Source: Bugula neritina (Eukaryota > Animalia > Bryozoa). Taken from it: 64,000 nucleotides of DNA. Location of the stretch: assembly GCA_964035545.1 (NCBI GenBank), contig OZ037765.1, forward strand, positions 31,247,504 through 31,311,503, in the 5' to 3' direction. Position numbers and translations under genes: made by a program. Within the stretch, counting starts at the first letter, position 1, and each line of letters opens with the position of its first letter. Below are positions 4,472 to 20,700 of this stretch, in pieces. The notes beneath the pieces were generated by a model. That model saw only the letters and a program-made list of their open reading frames with translations, ran no database searches and had not been told where the DNA came from.

Positions 4472-11952
<7,481 letters not shown>

Positions 11953-13300: not shown

Positions 13301-13671
13301 CTAGAGACTATCTTTGTAATGTCAAGGCCATATTAGTGTGACCTTCTTTTGCGTTCAACTTGTTTGTGTAAAGCAACTCCTATACAGTGATCAGTTTTTT
13401 ATTAAAGGATTTGTGTCCTCTTTTTGCCACAGCCACGACCAATAATAGCGCTAGATACTTGTAAACAACTTTAAAATGGTTTCGCTTTCAGTTTCATAGA
13501 TGGCACACTGCGACTATTTCTTTCAAGAACCTTATTCATAAAGTTGTTCTAAGAATTAGCTTCAAAGTTTTGCAGTGGTATTGATTTATTATATTAAACA
13601 TTGTTTAAAAATACGTTAAACTTAGTTTGCCAAATATGTTTCTCAATGAATAAACTATTAGTATTAGTATT

Positions 13672-13862
13672 TGTTATAGTGGCACGCTGAGAGTTTAGCT
13701 AATGACAATAGCCTATCAGATACGTGAGCTATAGTGTTACTAAGAGTTGCCCTACCAGCCACCGTATAGCTGAGATAGCTACAAGCTAAGGCAGATAAAA
13801 CCCAGACAAACAGAGTGAACGGTCTCCTTCATCTAGCAGCTTTATCACTGATTGCTATAACA
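13672..13862 (+). repeat. 5' LTR
   Basis: TG...CA with an 8-bp terminal inverted repeat. Identical to the 3' LTR except TACGTG vs TACATG. Confidence 0.97.
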
Positions 13863-13876
13863 TGGCGCAGTCAGCA
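13863..13876 (+). other. Primer binding site, tRNA-Ser-like
   Basis: TGGCGCAGTCAGCA directly after the LTR. Resembles the complement of a tRNA-Ser 3' end (...GACUGCGCCA). Confidence 0.7.
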
Positions 13877-13996
13877 TTTTAACGAACCTGCCAGTGAGAA
13901 ACTCTTTCTGTCCTTACAACTATAGATGATAGATAAGTACTTTCTTCAATTAATCATTATCAGTTGCAAGTGTTTTGAATATAATATAATAATATA

Positions 13997-14157
13997 AGTG
14001 TAGTGTAGTGTAGTGTAGTGTAGTGTAGTGTAGTGTAGTGTAGTGTAGTGTAGTGTAGTGTAGTGTAGTGTAGTGTAGTGTGGTGCAGTGCTACTGTTGG
14101 TGCAGTGTTATTGTTAGTGCAGTGTTATTGTTAGTGTTGTGTTATTGTTAGTGTAGT
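13997..14157. repeat. (TAGTG)n microsatellite in the retroelement leader
   Basis: About 16 perfect TAGTG units to 14080, then degenerate units. Confidence 0.95.
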
Positions 14158-14365
14158 CTAATGAGTGATAATCGTAATTTGATATCGTGATTCACAGCTG
14201 GCAACTGTGATACTACAGTCATTTACAACAAGTGACCGAAACAGTGATACTCAGTGTTTAAGATATTTTGTGATTGGCATCTTGACATAACACACGAGTA
14301 AATCAAGGCTCCAAGCTAGTACAAGTAGTAACCTTTGTAGCACAGGGAATCGTAACAACAAAGTC

Positions 14366-15502
14366 ATGGATTTAAATTCATTTCCAAGACTTCAATTGAA
14401 TTGTAATGATGTGACAGGATCATGGAATGATTGGCTAGCTCAATTTGAGATAACAGTAGAGTTAACTACTTTGAATCTGGGAAAAGAGACAGTGGAGGGT
14501 GTAGAAGTAAATAAATTTAGAGGTAGGACTAAGTTGTTAGCATTGTTGAGCGCAATAGGCAATGATGGTAGAGCCACGTTACAATCTCTTGGCTTTGATT
14601 TAAGAAACAATGGGAATGAAGGCTATGAGCAAGCATTAGGTCTACTTAGGGGCCACTATGATAGGTCAGATAGCTTTTATGTTAAAACAATGAGGTTTGT
14701 GACAGTGTCACAGGCCATTGATGAGGATGAAAGAGAATACTTGCTGAGAGTAGAAAAACTTAGTAGAGAATTAGGTTTAGGTGCTGGGACCGAGGATGTT
14801 AGAAGGAGACTTAGTGTTGCCTTAGCAGTAAATGGCTTGCGCGATACTAATGCTAGGAGACAATTATTGCAAGAACCCGATTTATCCTGGGACGACTTAA
14901 ATACCAAGCTTAAAGCAAAAAAGCTAGCTAGAGACTCAGACCTACTTTTAAATGAAGCTAGGACAATAGTGGAAGTCAAACAAGAAGTCGGGGCTGTAAG
15001 TTCTCTTAAGCAGACTAGAAACAGTAGCAATGACACCTGTGACAGTTATTCTGTTAATAGGGTTTCTAGATCTAGAATAAAGTGGAGACCTTATTTGAGA
15101 AGTAGCCTTAGGAATAGTGACCACTATAGAAGTAGAAGCTCGAGTGGATCTAGTAATAGCTCTGATGATCATAGTAAACGACATTACAATAGTAGGGATA
15201 AATTCTGTTCAAGCCAACGAAGGAGGAGGGATGAAAAACCTCTCGTAGATAGACTGAATTCGGGTTACTATCATTCTAGGTCTAAAAGGTTTAGCTCCCC
15301 TAGAAGAGAAGGAAATCTTTGCTATCATTGTAAAAAACATGATCATAGAATTAGGGACTGCCCTGATGTAAGGTGCTTCGTATGTAACTGCCGAGGGCAC
15401 ACCACTAAAGATTGCCCCGAAAGAGAGACCAAACCTTATAGGTCAAGTAGTGGGAGTAGTGATAGGAATAAGGGTTATAGGAGAGTCAGATTTGCAAGCT
15501 GA
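14366..15502 (+). CDS. gag: Gag (capsid-like N-terminus, Ser/Arg-rich linker, two CCHC knuckles)
   Basis: 378-aa ORF. WNDWLAQFE...LLSAIG...YEQALGLLRGHY pattern typical of Mag-type Gypsy Gag. Knuckles CYHCKKHDHRIRDC and CFVCNCRGHTTKDC. Confidence 0.9.
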   Translation: MDLNSFPRLQLNCNDVTGSWNDWLAQFEITVELTTLNLGKETVEGVEVNKFRGRTKLLALLSAIGNDGRATLQSLGFDLRNNGNEGYEQALGLLRGHYDRSDSFYVKTMRFVTVSQAIDEDEREYLLRVEKLSRELGLGAGTEDVRRRLSVALAVNGLRDTNARRQLLQEPDLSWDDLNTKLKAKKLARDSDLLLNEARTIVEVKQEVGAVSSLKQTRNSSNDTCDSYSVNRVSRSRIKWRPYLRSSLRNSDHYRSRSSSGSSNSSDDHSKRHYNSRDKFCSSQRRRRDEKPLVDRLNSGYYHSRSKRFSSPRREGNLCYHCKKHDHRIRDCPDVRCFVCNCRGHTTKDCPERETKPYRSSSGSSDRNKGYRRVRFAS

Positions 15503-15622
15503 CTATATGATGGCAATGACAGCAAGTTATTTCCTCCTGAACAAGGAGAAATTACGGATACTAGACGGGGGAGACTAAGCAAACCTCCTAATAGACTAAA
15601 CATGCAGAGGTATAAATATTAA
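15503..15622 (+). pseudogene. In-frame post-stop extension carrying a Pol/integrase C-terminus-like motif
   Basis: After TGA, in frame: LYDGNDSKLFPPEQGEITDTRRGRLSKPPNRLNMQRYKY*. TRRGRLSKPPNRL resembles the TRSGRxxxPPxRL tail of Gypsy/Mag Pol. Confidence 0.6.
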
Positions 15623-15691
15623 TGTGTTTTTATAGATATCGTTTTAGAAAACTTGAGAAAAACAATATATAGATAGAGAAAGAGACAAACA

Positions 15692-16732
15692 ATGAGCAAT
15701 AGTGAGAAAGAGAAGGAAGGTATAGGGGAACCCGACATGGACTCTTGGTCTAAAGCCGGACCCTCAGGAAGACATAAAGAAACGGTAAAAGTAGCTAACC
15801 CCCAGGGTAAGCCCAAGAATACAGAAGATAAGGCTAAGCTTAAGAAGCCACATGAGGTATGTGGCAACAAGGGCACAATTAGGTGTGCCATCTGTAGATG
15901 CTTCAGGGATCACTCTGCCCGAGACTGTCCCAATAATAAGTGTTACAGGTGTGGGCAGAAAGGTCATTGGGTGGAGGACTGCAGAGAAGTCTATTGCAGT
16001 TGGTGTTGTGTCGCAGCCGAACACAAAACCTCAGACTGTAGTCACGCACCTTCTAGCTTCAAGCGGAAGGCTGTTAATGGTGTTGACTTTCAAGATCTAG
16101 CACCAAAATTAGCCAAGGTTTCAGGTAGTCAGAAATCAAACTATGCAAGTGTTGCCTCTGGTGGTGTAGCTACATCATCAAGCTATGTTCATGCATTAAA
16201 GCCTAAAAATGTTATTGTCAGTGAAGTTTCAGGGTTCCTGAATGGCTTGACTGGGTGCGACTTCCTGGATGGGGAGGCTTATGCACTAAGGAAAGAGGAA
16301 TTAAATAGAAAAAAGCAAAAACTTCAACGAAAGTTCAACAGGCAAATGGAAGAGATCAGTGAGCAAGAGAGTCTCTTGGAAAAGGAGTATCAGTGCTCAA
16401 TGGCTATTAAAGTAGCAATCGAAAACTGGGCCAACGTGGCCAACGTGCATTCCAGAGGGTTGGGTAGCACGATACTAAACCCTGCAACCACAGTTGCGGA
16501 AGGTCCCAGTGGTAACCAGGAGGAGTCAAAGGCCGTAGAGGAGTCGCCGACCCCAGGTCGCCCTCGGGACGACACTTGGGAGGAGTCAATGGCCGTAGAG
16601 CCCCAGACCCCCGGTGTACATGGTGGTTCAGACCTTGGTCTGAGACCGACCTACAGTCCTAGTCAGCCTCAGGCAACTGAGACTGGGGAGGTGAAGATGG
16701 AAACATCTTCTAATCCCGAAGCACTGCATTGA
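15692..16732 (+). CDS. Retroelement ORF2: three zinc knuckles, coiled coil and acidic disordered tail
   Basis: 346-aa intact ORF. CAICRCFRDHSARDC, CYRCGQKGHWVEDC, CSWCCVAAEHKTSDC; NYASVA motif; heptad-like LRKEELNRKKQKLQRKFNRQMEEISEQESLLEKE; repeats EESKAVE/EESMAVE. Confidence 0.85.
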   Translation: MSNSEKEKEGIGEPDMDSWSKAGPSGRHKETVKVANPQGKPKNTEDKAKLKKPHEVCGNKGTIRCAICRCFRDHSARDCPNNKCYRCGQKGHWVEDCREVYCSWCCVAAEHKTSDCSHAPSSFKRKAVNGVDFQDLAPKLAKVSGSQKSNYASVASGGVATSSSYVHALKPKNVIVSEVSGFLNGLTGCDFLDGEAYALRKEELNRKKQKLQRKFNRQMEEISEQESLLEKEYQCSMAIKVAIENWANVANVHSRGLGSTILNPATTVAEGPSGNQEESKAVEESPTPGRPRDDTWEESMAVEPQTPGVHGGSDLGLRPTYSPSQPQATETGEVKMETSSNPEALH

Positions 16733-17069
16733 GGTTCTGGTCAGTCTCAGGCAACTGAGACTGAGGGAGAAGAGGGTGGGAACATCCTCCGATTCCAACT
16801 CACTTACTTACACACTTACCGACACACTAAACAACCTACTCACCTAACTTACTCACCTACTTATTTACTCACACACTCAACGACACACTGACTCGCGAAC
16901 TACTAAATTACAAATAGTTAAAGCTTGTGTTTACAGTTTCTGGCATATAGAGGTGAGTAAGTTTACCCACAGACATGTGGTACTCATCAGCTTATAGCTT
17001 TTAGAAATAGTATGTAATTGAAATGCTTAGTTTTAGCAGGTGGTCACCAGCCTTTATTGGAAGGGGGCA

Positions 17070-17260
17070 TGTTATAGTGGCACGCTGAGAGTTTAGCTAA
17101 TGACAATAGCCTATCAGATACATGAGCTATAGTGTTACTAAGAGTTGCCCTACCAGCCACCGTATAGCTGAGATAGCTACAAGCTAAGGCAGATAAAACC
17201 CAGACAAACAGAGTGAACGGTCTCCTTCATCTAGCAGCTTTATCACTGATTGCTATAACA
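17070..17260 (+). repeat. 3' LTR
   Basis: Direct repeat of 13672-13862, preceded by the polypurine tract. Confidence 0.97.
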
Positions 17261-17789
17261 GTATTGCTATTTGCATATAATTTTATCGCCATCACTTAAT
17301 TTCAGACGTACTCTGAGACTCACAGTCAATCACATTGGCAGTCTTACTCTTTACCTTGATCTTAGCGATATTCAAATGAGTGTCAAAGTACCATTAAGAA
17401 TTACATCTATTTAAGCAAATTTAAATATCTATTTGTAAATGCAACTCTTCTTTTTTTTTTGTCATCCTTGTTAATGTAAAGCTGCAAATAACTAAGAAGC
17501 GTCAGTCACTCTCTCAGTCAAAGTGAAACTGAAGCTCAAATGCAAACTCAGTGTTTTAAGACTACTCACAAAAATAAGTTTTTCAATTTTAAGCAATATT
17601 ATGGTCGGTAAGATTAGGTATTTTGCTAAATTAAGATTTGCAGCAAGTCAATTAATATTGTGTTTATTCAAGTCACTGTTTTGACTAGTGAAGTACCTAA
17701 GCCAGTAAGTTCTTTAGTCGTTATTAGTTGAATTTGACAACTTGAAAAAAATATTTGTTTGTTACTTAACTTTTACTTTGTAGAATTAA

Positions 17790-20700
17790 ATGGCTCGCAG
17801 AAATATTGAAGCAGCCATTCAGGCAAGCCAAGAATTGGAGTTAGAAGGTGAGTGCAGAAGACCACTAATTTATAATGTTTTTCAGTTATTATTTATTATC
17901 ACAGACATATTTTAATTTACGGCATGTATTGGTAATGATTTAGTGAAGTGATCTTTTGAGAAAGAAATCTATTTTTGTTTCAGGAAAATTGTTGCCGTGT
18001 AAAATACCAAACTCCTACAGCAAGTTGGAGTCTTATAAAGTAATCAGTAGCCAGCAAGAATTAGATGGAGTGTATAGTTTGCAATATTCCCCTGATGGTT
18101 CAATGTTAGCAGTTGGGACAGGAAATGAAGCTATGAGGGTTAGTTGTAGTTTCCCAACAAAATACAGTACAGCTAGTACAACAAAGTACTTTTTTCTTCA
18201 AAAAGGGGGGGGGGAGCTCAACAAATCTGTTTGATGATTACTACAGCATGTTACCTGTTTCATAAAAATTGAGAAAACTGAAAAATTACTATAACATAAA
18301 TGTAGATATTATAATGCAAAAAACAAAAATATCTTTGAAAGATATTGTTTTAGCTTGTATAAAGCCTTTTTGGAACATTCTTGCATTTTTATATCATAGA
18401 ATTAGTTTTTTTTGATACAGAAATTTTTATGTATAATCCAAAAAACCTCAAAATTTTTAGTTATAATTAAGTTATAAGTAAGTGTTATTTTCAATGTTAT
18501 GTTTGAGTTCTTTCTAATGCTGATTTATGTTGAAAGTTGTATGACACGGCATCTGGAAAACATATCGAAGACCTGCGTCAGCCAAGATATGGCGGATTTC
18601 CTGTCAAGAGTCTTAGGTGGCATCCTTATGATCACCATATTCTGTACGGTGCAACTTGCAACGGGATGATCTATGCACTGAATGTAAAGTCACACACCTG
18701 CACAGCTGTTGTCAGCGGTATGTTGCATCTAGCTGTCTGCTGCCATCTTATTTAAAATCTTATTATTGTGAAATTAATTTACTTTTATTGATATTTTAAC
18801 CTGTGTAGTTTTATAGTATAATGAAAGAAATTTCACGACTTGTAGACTGGTATTATTGCTTAGTGCTAGGCCTGCTGTACATGCATGTAAGCTGATGTAT
18901 AAGTTGCTAGGCAACGCTAAATGCAACCATTAAAATCAAATACCAAGAAATATTCAAAGTAAATGTAGAAGAGGTAATGTCTTTAACTAATTATAATAAC
19001 CAGTCAGTGAAAAATAAATCTTTGCTTTTCTAATAACTATTCATTCATGTTTCAGAAATTTTTTTTTATAAAGTAAAGCATAAGTTGCATTTCAGAAGGA
19101 GCGCTAACCTGTGTTCTTTTCAAAACTAACAGTTTGAATTATGGGCTATTATGCAGATCTGCAATTTATAATATATTTCTGCTGACAGTCAAACTCTCTC
19201 TGCAATGATTGTTCACTATTGTTCAATGTTTGTATATTGGATTTCATTATATGCAAAAGTATATGCATGTCTGTCTTTTAAGAACGAAAAAATGAAATAA
19301 ATTGCCTCGACTTCAGTGCAGACGGTTCAACATTCGCTACAGCTGGTAAAGACCTGGCTGTTAGAATATACGACACAAAAACTTGTAAGGTATATTCTAC
19401 ATAAACTGTGTCAGTATTCTTGAATACTACCTTGTAATATCGATATAATACACTTGCAAGTAATGCTTTTATTGAAGTATGTTTCATAGAAACAATGCTA
19501 TTCATTAGATATTAATTTAGCTGAAGCTTACAGTATTAAAATAACCTGTTTTCCTCAGTTTTATTAGAGATTTTATTTGGGTTGTCAAGCAGCGTTAGCT
19601 GAAATTTTATCCCTCAAAAGAGGAATAACCAGTCACACTACTGTATATATTGAGATGTGTCTACTGGGTTTAATTTAATGTGCAGAGTATTACATTAGTT
19701 GGAATATTTGTAACAAATCAATAATCTTAAAAAAGTGTACAAAACAAGTTGTATAAAGTTAGAATTCAAGCTGTAAATCATTCAGAAAGACATTTACTTT
19801 GCCTCTTTAAAGTTATTTAAAGGCTTAAATCGGAGAAGATTTTTAATGGTTTAGTTTTTAATAATGGATGTTTTAAAATAACAAAATAAATCAATACTTT
19901 GAATATAACAGCAGCTTTTATACAGTCTTTCTGCAGTTGCTTCTTAGAACAGCATTCATAATGGGTCTCTTTTATTCACCATCTTTTCAGCATTTCAACT
20001 GATGTTTTTTAAATGTCATTTCCTGTTTAATATTTTCTATCCTAAAGCTTTTGTGATTCACTGAATCTAACGTGCATTAAACTATTTGTATCAGGAAAAT
20101 AGACTTTATACTATAGGTGGGCTAAAGTACGTTGCAGAATCTATTTAGAAAGCACTTGTCAAAGTTGTGAAATATTAAGCTATTTAATAATCTAAGAAAT
20201 GCTATCAGTGGGAGACATGAAAATGCGCACACTATTTAATACCTAACTATATAGATATAGATTTCAAACATGAGTATATGAAAATATGATTAGATGTGAA
20301 GTTTTGTCATGTTGGAAATTAATAGAAAGTTTTTGCATTTTATAATCATCTGGGATAACAAAAAATATAGTAAACAAAGAAGTTTTCAACTGAACAAAAT
20401 ATAATGTTATAAATGAATTTTTTATATCAAGTCAATGTATAATGATGCACTTTAGTGATTTTCCTCTTATTTTGTTTTTGGTGTGTAGGAAATAAAATGC
20501 TATGAAGGTTATAGCAGTTCGACACCTGCAGAAGACACTGAAGTTCAAGGTCATGGAATGAGAGTGTTTGCACTGAAGCATTCACCTGATAACAGTCACA
20601 TCTTACTCTCAGGGGGCTGGGATAATCACATTAAGGTAAGTCTTGTATTACATCCTTATATAGCTGTACTTACACTAGTATAATATCTTATACACTTACA

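What the first reader, a model, noticed from the sequence alone, without database searches (positions are those of the whole stretch)
15494..15622. Gag ends in a leaky TGA-CTA stop followed in frame by the Pol C-terminal motif: possible readthrough grafting the integrase tail onto Gag
Seen: the gag stop TGA (15500-02) is followed by CTA and 39 open codons ending TDTRRGRLSKPPNRLNMQRYKY*. Known: UGA-CUA is a classic stop-codon readthrough context, and TRSGRxxxPPxRL-like motifs end Pol in many Gypsy/Mag elements. Inference: pol was deleted except for its basic tail, which remains in frame behind a readthrough signal. A minor Gag isoform could therefore carry a putative nuclear/chromatin-targeting peptide, which would be a neat recoding system in a non-autonomous element.
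Basis: partly seen in the sequence, partly recalled or inferred. Interest (0 to 1): 0.8.

Follow-up and report, generated by a model that had tools for sequence, protein, structure and literature searches.

The report
Pol-deleted Gypsy element, readthrough relic
This is a young Gypsy-type retrotransposon that has lost almost all of pol: its gag stop (TGA-CTA) is the family's inherited gag-pol readthrough signal and is now followed in frame only by the last 32 codons of Pol, but across 18 copies that tail drifts like unconstrained DNA, so it is most likely a leftover and not a purposeful recoding device.

Summary
Gag (14366-15502) ends in TGA-CTA, and 39 sense codons follow, up to TAA at 15620-22.

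- The element (13672-17260; 191-bp LTRs, TSD GTATT) belongs to a family of 18 pol-deleted Ty3/Gypsy copies.
- The one intact autonomous relative in the genome (L031) has the same gag-TGA-CTA junction. It is in frame with a 1063-codon PR-RT-RH-IN pol whose last 32 codons are the tail seen here.
- The deletion is 3075 nt (1025 codons), in frame, at a 3-4 nt microhomology.
- Three more distant lineages (63%, 59% and 45% PR-RT identity) also have an in-frame TGA-CTA junction. None shows a stable downstream RNA structure, so the short context is probably the ancestral readthrough signal, and it survives the deletion.

The functional idea is not supported.
- Gag is intact in 15/15 full copies (0 indels, dN/dS-like ratio 0.38).
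- The tail carries 13 variable sites in 114 nt (12 nonsynonymous, 1 synonymous) and one frameshifted copy. That density matches the intergenic spacer and the decaying ORF3.
- Several changes hit the conserved basic motif.
- All copies descend from one deletion event, so frame preservation is a 1-in-3 outcome.

A minor Gag+38-aa product is probably made, as a by-product.

The parts
13667..13671 (+). Target-site duplication GTATT (5' copy)
   Evidence: the same 5 nt flank both LTRs (13667-71 and 17261-65).
13672..13862 (+). 5' LTR (191 bp, TG...CA)
   Evidence: 99% identical to 17070-17260. The first 20 nt are identical to the LTR of the autonomous relative L031.
13863..13876 (+). Primer-binding site (TGGCGCAGTCAGCA)
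   Evidence: it lies directly after the 5' LTR and is identical over 30 nt to the corresponding place in L031. Its role as PBS is inferred from position and the TGG start.
14366..15499 (+). gag coding sequence (378 codons, two CCHC knuckles)
   Evidence: Intact, without indels, in 15/15 full copies, with a dN/dS-like ratio of 0.38 among copies. dN/dS is 0.17 against L031 gag.
15500..15505 (+). gag stop TGA plus CTA: inherited gag|pol readthrough context
   Evidence: Invariant in all 18 copies. The same hexamer, in frame with an intact pol, is found in L031, L053-55 and L056-57 and, before a truncated 377-aa pol frame, L069. The UGA CU(A) motif is known from PMC4207609 and PMC13517186.
15503..15520 (+). 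First six pol codons (LYDGND), upstream of the deleted protease
   Evidence: aligns to L031 pol codons 1-6.
15517..15520 (+). Deletion joint with 3-4 nt microhomology (T)GAC
   Evidence: window 13672-15520 aligns to autonomous positions 1-1875 and window 15517-17248 to 4947-6665. 3075 nt (1025 codons) are missing.
15521..15619 (+). Last 32 pol codons (integrase C-terminal tail with a basic TRRGR..KPP.RLN motif) plus one private extra codon
   Evidence: Variation among copies looks unconstrained.
15620..15622 (+). Stop TAA of the extension (second of the ancestral tandem stops)
15692..16732 (+). ORF3 (346 aa, CCHC knuckle) in the env position
   Evidence: Present and intact in L031. dN/dS is 0.21 between lineages. 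Broken in 12 of 15 deleted copies. No relatives by Atlas features.
17059..17069 (+). Polypurine tract (GGAAGGGGGCA)
   Evidence: lies directly before the 3' LTR and is identical to L031. Its role is inferred from position.
17070..17260 (+). 3' LTR
17261..17265 (+). Target-site duplication GTATT (3' copy)

Best explanation
Window 13672-17260 is one copy of a young, non-autonomous Ty3/Gypsy LTR retrotransposon family with at least 18 copies. The family arose once, by a 3075-nt in-frame deletion of pol at a 3-4 nt microhomology. Reverse-transcriptase template switching is the probable cause (inferred). In this clade Gag-Pol is made by reading through a leaky UGA-CUA gag stop; this follows from the in-frame arrangement and its conservation and has not been measured. 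The deletion starts 18 nt after that stop, and no downstream RNA structure appears to be needed. The deleted element therefore keeps the signal, and a small share of its ribosomes should extend Gag by 38-39 residues: six from the start of Pol and 32 from the integrase tail. That extended product is a by-product. Selection in the family acts on gag, which stays intact in every copy and is presumably needed in cis for packaging. It does not act on the tail or on ORF3, which both drift. The copies are mobilised in trans by RT and integrase from an autonomous relative such as the lineage of L031, which has identical PBS, PPT and LTR 5' end.
For: Anatomy: LTRs, TSD, PBS and PPT.
Autonomous relative L031: gag 401 aa, TGA-CTA, an in-frame 1063-codon pol with Asp_protease, RVT_1, RT_RNaseH, Integrase_H2C2 and rve domains, ORF3, and 100% identical LTRs.
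Deletion: mapped to 3075 nt with overlap 15517-15520.
Junction: TGA-CTA sits in frame before the protease in lineages at 63%, 59% and 45% PR-RT identity. Lineages at 43% or below, and one sister family, have a fused gag-pol ORF with GAA CCA in place of TGA CTA.
RNA structure: none stable 3' of the stop in any lineage, z between -1.0 and +1.1.
Literature: UGA CU(A) alone promotes readthrough in fungi and animal cells (PMC4207609), and UGA CUA is the type II viral context (PMC13517186).
Copies: all 18 keep TGA-CTA and 17 keep the frame open. Gag is intact in 15/15, ORF3 in 3/15.
Variable sites: gag 59/1134 (24 synonymous, 35 nonsynonymous), tail 13/114 (1 synonymous, 12 nonsynonymous), spacer 8/69, ORF3 95/1038. 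Fisher tests, gag against tail: p=0.026 for the synonymous/nonsynonymous split, p=0.018 for density, p=0.0027 for singleton density.
Mobilisation: six of six testable copies have their own 5-bp TSD, so the deleted form transposed repeatedly.
Against: Readthrough has not been measured in this organism. The fold tools cannot see pseudoknots or long-range pairings, so a stimulator lost with the deletion cannot be excluded. All 13 tail variants are singletons, so part of the drift may have arisen after insertion. With 114 nt and 18 young copies (96-99% identity), the power to detect weak selection on the tail is low. No tail-mutated lineage is seen to have propagated; at the 17% sharing rate of the other regions about 2 shared variants were expected and 0 were seen (P about 0.09). 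The putative RNA runs are contig sets whose RNA nature is not established.
Confidence: 0.7

Rival explanations
1. One reading: the Gag+tail readthrough isoform is a selected feature. The integrase C-terminal basic peptide, placed on a minority of Gag molecules, helps the pol-less element in cis, for example by nuclear import or chromatin tethering of its particle or by recruiting the helper's partners. The model is the gag-pol fusion protein of mouse IAP I-delta-1 elements.
For: The deletion is in frame and keeps exactly the conserved terminal motif. The motif ends Pol in lineages down to 45% identity, so it has a function in Pol. 17 of 18 copies are open and all keep TGA-CTA. No tail-mutated variant is shared by two copies. 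The deleted family outnumbers its autonomous relative 18 to 1. There is precedent for a cis-acting gag-pol fusion in a deleted element (PMC6466679).
Against: There was one deletion event, so being in frame has a prior of 1/3. Tail variants are 12 nonsynonymous to 1 synonymous. Their density is equal to the spacer and the decaying ORF3 and 2.2-2.6 times that of gag. Changes hit the core motif: R>W, R>Q, P>L, K>R, N>D, R>G, L>I. There is one frameshifted copy. Openness of 38 codons in copies this young is expected without selection.
Confidence: 0.1
2. The extension is never translated to a meaningful extent. Readthrough in the autonomous elements depends on a stimulator inside the deleted 5' pol region (a pseudoknot or long-range pairing), or Pol is expressed by another route. 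In the deleted element UGA would then terminate normally, and the 39 codons are simply 3' UTR or spacer.
For: Many viral UGA-CUA sites have an extended 3' stem-loop that raises efficiency (PMC13517186 table; PMC4207609 conclusions). The +4 base here is U, not the favoured G. The tail evolves like non-coding DNA.
Against: No lineage shows a stable structure within 120-230 nt of the stop, with z-scores near 0. The only element conserved at the junction across lineages is the hexamer TGA CTA itself. The short motif alone gives measurable readthrough in fungal and human cells.
Confidence: 0.12
3. The stretch 15521-15691 was retained for a nucleic-acid role, not for its coding frame. It could hold signals for ORF3 expression (promoter, splice acceptor, re-initiation) or for RNA packaging or dimerisation. 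The open frame would then be incidental.
For: The stretch lies directly upstream of ORF3. The 3' part from the joint onward is much closer to L031 (tail dS 0.05, ORF3 dS 0.18) than gag is (dS 0.40).
Against: ORF3 is broken in 12 of 15 copies, and an ORF3-dead lineage amplified: a 14-nt deletion is shared by 5 copies. ORF3 expression is therefore dispensable for this family. The stretch has the highest density of variable sites in the element. No canonical splice joint into it appears in the contig runs.
Confidence: 0.06

Closest known systems
Gammaretrovirus and epsilonretrovirus gag-pro-pol expression by in-frame stop-codon readthrough (MoMLV)
   Same: Gag and pol are in one frame, separated by a single stop that lies after the NC zinc knuckles and shortly before the protease DTGA motif. 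A minority Gag-Pol product arises by readthrough (PMC13517186; PMC5009743).
   Different: MoMLV uses UAG-GGA plus an essential H-type pseudoknot 8 nt downstream. Here the stop is UGA-CUA and no stable 3' structure is detected in any lineage. These are Ty3/Gypsy elements, not retroviruses.
Type II UGA-CUA readthrough of alphaviruses and Plautia stali intestine virus, and the short cellular UGA CU(A) motif (LDHB, MDH1, fungal peroxisomal isoforms)
   Same: The hexamer is identical. The PSIV context AGC UGA CUA U matches the window's through the +4 base. The short motif alone gives a few percent readthrough and can add a targeting peptide to a minority isoform (PMC4207609, PMC4359377).
   Different: In the cellular cases the extension is conserved and carries a proven signal (PTS1). 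Here the extension is a deletion remnant with no sign of constraint in its present setting.
Mouse IAP I-delta-1 elements
   Same: An internally deleted, non-autonomous LTR element that outnumbers or out-transposes its full-length relatives. Its deletion joins gag to a pol remnant in one frame (PMC6466679).
   Different: In I-delta-1 the fusion is constitutive, removes part of gag, and its product has been shown to act in cis. Here gag is complete, the pol remnant is only 38 codons, it is reached only by readthrough, and no function is shown.
Gag-only 'semi-autonomous' Gypsy families (wheat RLG_Sabrina_SA, RLG_WHAM)
   Same: These elements keep an intact gag but lack RT and integrase, and they co-exist with an autonomous partner that supplies them (PMC9744471).
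   Different: They are plant families of thousands of copies that also keep the protease. No readthrough junction or pol-tail remnant is described for them.

Membership tests
Ty3/Gypsy (Metaviridae) LTR retrotransposon | Direct LTRs with TG...CA ends, flanked by a short target-site duplication | tested here: met
   191-bp LTRs at 99% identity, TG..CA ends, 5-bp TSD GTATT. Other copies have their own 5-bp TSDs.
Ty3/Gypsy (Metaviridae) LTR retrotransposon | Pol domain order PR-RT-RNaseH-integrase | tested here: met
   Met in the autonomous relative L031 (Pfam order Asp_protease, RVT_1, RT_RNaseH, Integrase_H2C2, rve). The window's element lacks all of these because of the deletion.
Ty3/Gypsy (Metaviridae) LTR retrotransposon | Gag with capsid region and CCHC nucleocapsid knuckles | tested here: met
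   zf-CCHC above the Pfam cut-off. Atlas features are nearest to retrotransposon Gag clusters at 0.93. A capsid fold was not modelled.
   No reference set was at hand. The costly protein search was not spent on a protein already explained by Pfam.
Non-autonomous LTR retrotransposon mobilised in trans | Lacks RT and integrase but shares LTR ends, PBS and PPT with an autonomous element in the same genome | tested here: met
   PBS (30 nt), PPT and the LTR 5' end are identical to L031, which has all ORFs open.
Non-autonomous LTR retrotransposon mobilised in trans | Several copies of the deleted form at different sites, each with its own TSD | tested here: met
   18 copies share the same joint. Seven distinct TSDs were read.
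Programmed stop-codon readthrough (type II, UGA-CUA) | UGA followed by CUA, with an in-frame downstream ORF that must be expressed | tested here: met
   L031, L053-55 and L056-57 have intact pol of 1044-1063 codons in frame behind TGA-CTA. L069 has the same junction before a 377-aa truncated frame.
Programmed stop-codon readthrough (type II, UGA-CUA) | Conservation of the stop context among diverged relatives | tested here: met
   The hexamer is identical in four lineages at 45-63% PR-RT identity, while flanking codons differ. One sister family has sense codons GAA CCA instead.
Programmed stop-codon readthrough (type II, UGA-CUA) | Measured readthrough product | not testable with these tools
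   No ribosome profiling or proteome was available. The public runs held only contigs of uncertain RNA status.
Functional readthrough extension (as in LDHB or MDH1) | Purifying selection on the extension in its present context | tested here: not met
   12 nonsynonymous to 1 synonymous variant. 0.114 variable sites per nt against 0.052 in gag. One frameshift. Motif residues are hit.
Functional readthrough extension (as in LDHB or MDH1) | Extension carries a signal of demonstrated function | tested here: inconclusive
   The motif is conserved at Pol C-termini in this genome, but its function is unknown. A literature search for the motif found nothing.
IAP I-delta-1-like cis-acting gag-pol fusion | The fusion protein promotes retrotransposition of its own RNA | not testable with these tools
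   This needs a mobilisation assay (referred).

The most novel reading that the evidence does not exclude
A pol-less Gypsy element uses the clade's short UGA-CUA readthrough signal to place the integrase C-terminal basic tail on a few percent of its own Gag. That isoform acts in cis, for example by nuclear entry or chromatin tethering of the parasite's particle, or by competing for the helper integrase's host partner. This would help explain why the deleted form outnumbers its autonomous relative 18 to 1.
Probability: 0.1. Interest if true: 0.65.

Novelty: new member of a known kind. Interest (0 to 1): 0.3.

Why it matters
The locus gives a clean natural pair: an intact Gypsy element and its in-frame pol-deleted parasite. 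It shows that a clade of animal Gypsy elements probably expresses Pol by UGA-CUA readthrough without an evident RNA stimulator, next to sister families that fused gag and pol into one ORF. That makes the clade a compact system for measuring context-only readthrough. It also shows selection acting on gag, but not on ORF3 or the pol remnant, in a non-autonomous family. The attractive idea of a recoded Gag carrying an integrase targeting peptide is not borne out by the evolutionary data, so the finding is mostly ordinary transposon biology.

Tried and rejected
- RNA structure 3' of the stop was sought in five junctions at 120 nt and four at about 220 nt. No z-score went beyond -1, so an MLV-like or alphavirus-like stimulator is not supported. 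Pseudoknots were not testable.
- Independent deletion derivatives were sought in the 59% and 45% families. None was found, so there is no replicate of the 'tail kept in frame' outcome.
- L032 and L033, which carry tail-like sequence, are degraded autonomous remnants. One is interrupted by a LINE-type RT. They are not Gag-tail fusions.
- Expression was tested on four putative RNA runs. They are contig sets, and their RNA nature is a guess. They hold both deleted-type and undeleted-type sequence, and show no canonical splice into the tail or ORF3. Nothing about translation can be drawn from them.
- A literature search for the Pol-tail motif gave nothing.
- An alternative genetic code (TGA as sense) was rejected. 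Pol and many Gypsy ORFs of 1000-1370 codons contain no TGA, and gag stops are single.
- The Pfam scan of the 39-aa extension was empty.
- The large protein searches were not used, because Pfam already explains pol and gag.
The commonest state per column was used only to count variants inside scripts.

Full report
**What is at the coordinates.** The gag ORF runs 14366-15502 (378 aa, CCHC knuckles) and ends TGA (15500-02) followed by CTA. After that, 39 sense codons run to TAA at 15620-22. By composition such an open run has a 5-7% chance, and 9 of 1332 TGA trinucleotides in the window are followed by CTA.

**The element.** Two 191-bp direct repeats lie at 13672-13862 and 17070-17260, 99% identical with TG...CA ends. 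The 5-bp duplication GTATT flanks them. A PBS-like TGGCGCAGTCAGCA follows the 5' LTR, and a purine tract GGAAGGGGGCA precedes the 3' LTR. Between the LTRs lie gag, the 39-codon stretch, a 69-nt spacer and ORF3 (15692-16732; 346 aa with a CCHC knuckle). No RT or integrase is present.

**The autonomous relative and the deletion.**
- A search of the window's own 216-Mb assembly found 18 copies with the same structure, 96-99% identical. It found one longer relative on contig C8, fetched as L031.
- On its minus strand L031 has identical 211-bp LTRs, a gag of 401 aa, a pol frame of 1063 codons and an intact ORF3. The Pfam order of pol is protease, RT, RNase H, integrase zinc domain, integrase core.
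- Its gag ends AGC TGA CTA TAT GAT GGC, and the frame runs straight on into the protease DTGA motif.
- Its pol ends with the same tail as the window, followed by two TAA stops.
- Window 13672-15520 aligns to autonomous positions 1-1875, and window 15517-17248 to 4947-6665. So 3075 nt (1025 codons) are missing, the joint has 3-4 nt of microhomology ((T)GAC), and the frame is kept: pol codons 1-6 are joined to the last 32.
- PBS, PPT and the LTR 5' end are identical between the two elements. That fits a helper-parasite relation; L031 itself is a sister lineage rather than the parent (gag dS 0.40).
- Six of six testable deleted copies carry their own 5-bp TSD, so the deleted form has transposed repeatedly.

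**Is TGA-CTA a readthrough signal?**
- More distant Gypsy lineages of the same genome were read at the gag|pol junction. The lineages at 63% (L069), 59% (L053-55) and 45% (L056-57) PR-RT identity all have TGA CTA in frame a few codons before the protease. The flanking codons differ, and the 45% lineage has TGA CTA G.
- Lineages at 43% identity or less have one fused gag-pol ORF.
- A sister family of the 59% lineage has GAA CCA exactly where the others have TGA CTA.
- Pol ORFs of 1044-1063 codons stay open behind the stop in three of these lineages (L031, L053-55, L056-57), and the stop sits in frame in all four. Readthrough is therefore by far the simplest route to Gag-Pol. This is inference, not measurement.
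- No lineage shows a stable structure in the 120-230 nt after the stop, with z from -1.0 to +1.1.
- The literature supports a context-only mechanism. UGA CU(A) alone gives readthrough in fungi and human cells (PMC4207609). UGA CUA is the type II viral context, and PSIV even shares AGC UGA CUA U (PMC13517186).
- The deletion begins 18 nt after the stop, so the deleted element most likely still reads through at the ancestral low rate.

**Is the tail a Pol motif?** Yes, within this genome. L031 ends ...TRRGRLSKPPKRLNMQRYK, a degraded relative ends ...TRRGRQCKPPNRLNMRR, the 45% lineage ends ...TTRGRVSRPPKRLNL, and the 59% lineage ends ...TRSGRQIRNKRFDDYVYY. The region between the integrase core and this tail is low-complexity. 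What the motif does is unknown, and a text search found nothing.

All 18 copies keep TGA-CTA and 17 keep the frame; L003 has a 1-nt deletion at 15567. But 38 codons in copies this young would stay open anyway. The copies do carry a signal of selection, which gives the comparison some power (15 full copies):

| Region | Variable sites | Synonymous : nonsynonymous | Indel events | ORF intact |
|---|---|---|---|---|
| gag | 59 / 1134 | 24 : 35 (ratio 0.38) | 0 | 15 of 15 |
| tail | 13 / 114 | 1 : 12 | 2 (one frameshift; one 3-nt deletion at the terminal stop codons) | 14 of 15 |
| spacer | 8 / 69 | not applicable | 1 | not applicable |
| ORF3 | 95 / 1038 | 29 : 64 (ratio 0.61) | 10 | 3 of 15 |

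- One 14-nt ORF3 deletion is shared by five copies, so an ORF3-dead lineage went on amplifying.
- The tail's site density equals that of the spacer and ORF3.
- Gag differs from the tail in the synonymous/nonsynonymous split (p=0.026), in density (p=0.018) and in singleton density (p=0.0027).
- The tail changes include core-motif residues (R>W, R>Q, P>L, R>G and others).
- All copies share one joint, so the in-frame outcome is a single event with a 1/3 prior.
- No independent deletion derivative exists in the related families to serve as a replicate.

**Caveats.** All tail variants are singletons. The region is short. Readthrough is unmeasured. The public runs that hold the sequence are contig sets of uncertain RNA status; they contain both the deleted and the undeleted form.

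**Verdict.**
- The functional inference is not supported. The most likely mechanism is that a few percent of ribosomes extend Gag by 38 residues as an unselected by-product. Gag itself is what the family keeps under selection, and RT and integrase come from an autonomous relative.
- The closest known systems are gammaretroviral gag-pol readthrough, type II UGA-CUA readthrough, mouse IAP I-delta-1 (PMC6466679) and gag-only semi-autonomous Gypsy families (PMC9744471).
- I rate it a new member of known kinds, with interest 0.3. The functional reading keeps about a 10% probability.

Noticed in passing
window 15692-16732; L031:2058-3098 (-): ORF3 (346 aa, CCHC knuckle, env position) is a real gene in the autonomous lineage: dN/dS is 0.21 against L031 and it is intact there. 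It is broken in 12 of 15 deleted copies, and a 14-nt deletion at 15790 is shared by five copies. Atlas features find no relatives (best 0.77).
   Followed up: partly
window 14366-16732 against L031: Synonymous divergence from L031 is uneven: gag 0.40, ORF3 0.18, tail 0.05. The deleted family, or L031, may be a recombinant of two lineages. The switch may lie at or near the deletion joint, as expected from template switching between co-packaged RNAs.
   Followed up: partly
L014 (G000:C1:6465321-6469655), aligned to window 15582-15618: This copy has four private A>G changes within 31 nt of the tail, plus one more shared with L013, and none elsewhere in 2.7 kb. Such a cluster is what ADAR-type hyperediting of the RNA intermediate would leave.
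   Followed up: no
L070-L073 (for example G000:C1:32114721-32115324): A 12-copy sister family has sense codons GAA CCA exactly where its relatives have TGA CTA, which gives a fused gag-pol ORF. Closely related families in one genome have therefore switched between readthrough and fusion.
   Followed up: partly
window 13850-13862 and 17248-17260: Both LTRs of this copy end ...CACTGATTGCTATAACA. The other copies and L031 have a U5 end about 20 nt longer, ...CACTGGTAAGACA...GGTAATCTAACA. This copy transposed with a shortened U5 end.
   Followed up: no
window 13987-14170: A (GTAGT)n microsatellite and degenerate repeats lie in the 5' untranslated leader. Alignments between copies break here, so its length varies among copies.
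   Followed up: no
L017 and L018 (G000:C8:2196020-2199829 and C8:421396-425205): Two copies on the same contig share an inverted duplication of gag 14722-15036. This looks like a segmental duplication of a rearranged copy, not two insertions.
   Followed up: no
L029 (G000:C9:5158398-5161742), ORF 1355-2728: Another abundant Gypsy family, 67% identical in the gag N-terminal part, has gag fused to the protease in one 457-aa ORF that stops right after the protease. This is a third gag/pol arrangement in the same genome.
   Followed up: no
window 17956-18755: ORF fragments with a WD-repeat look (...YSPDGSMLAVGTG..., ...RWHPYDHHILYGA...) lie just downstream of the element. It may sit in or next to a host gene.
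   Followed up: no
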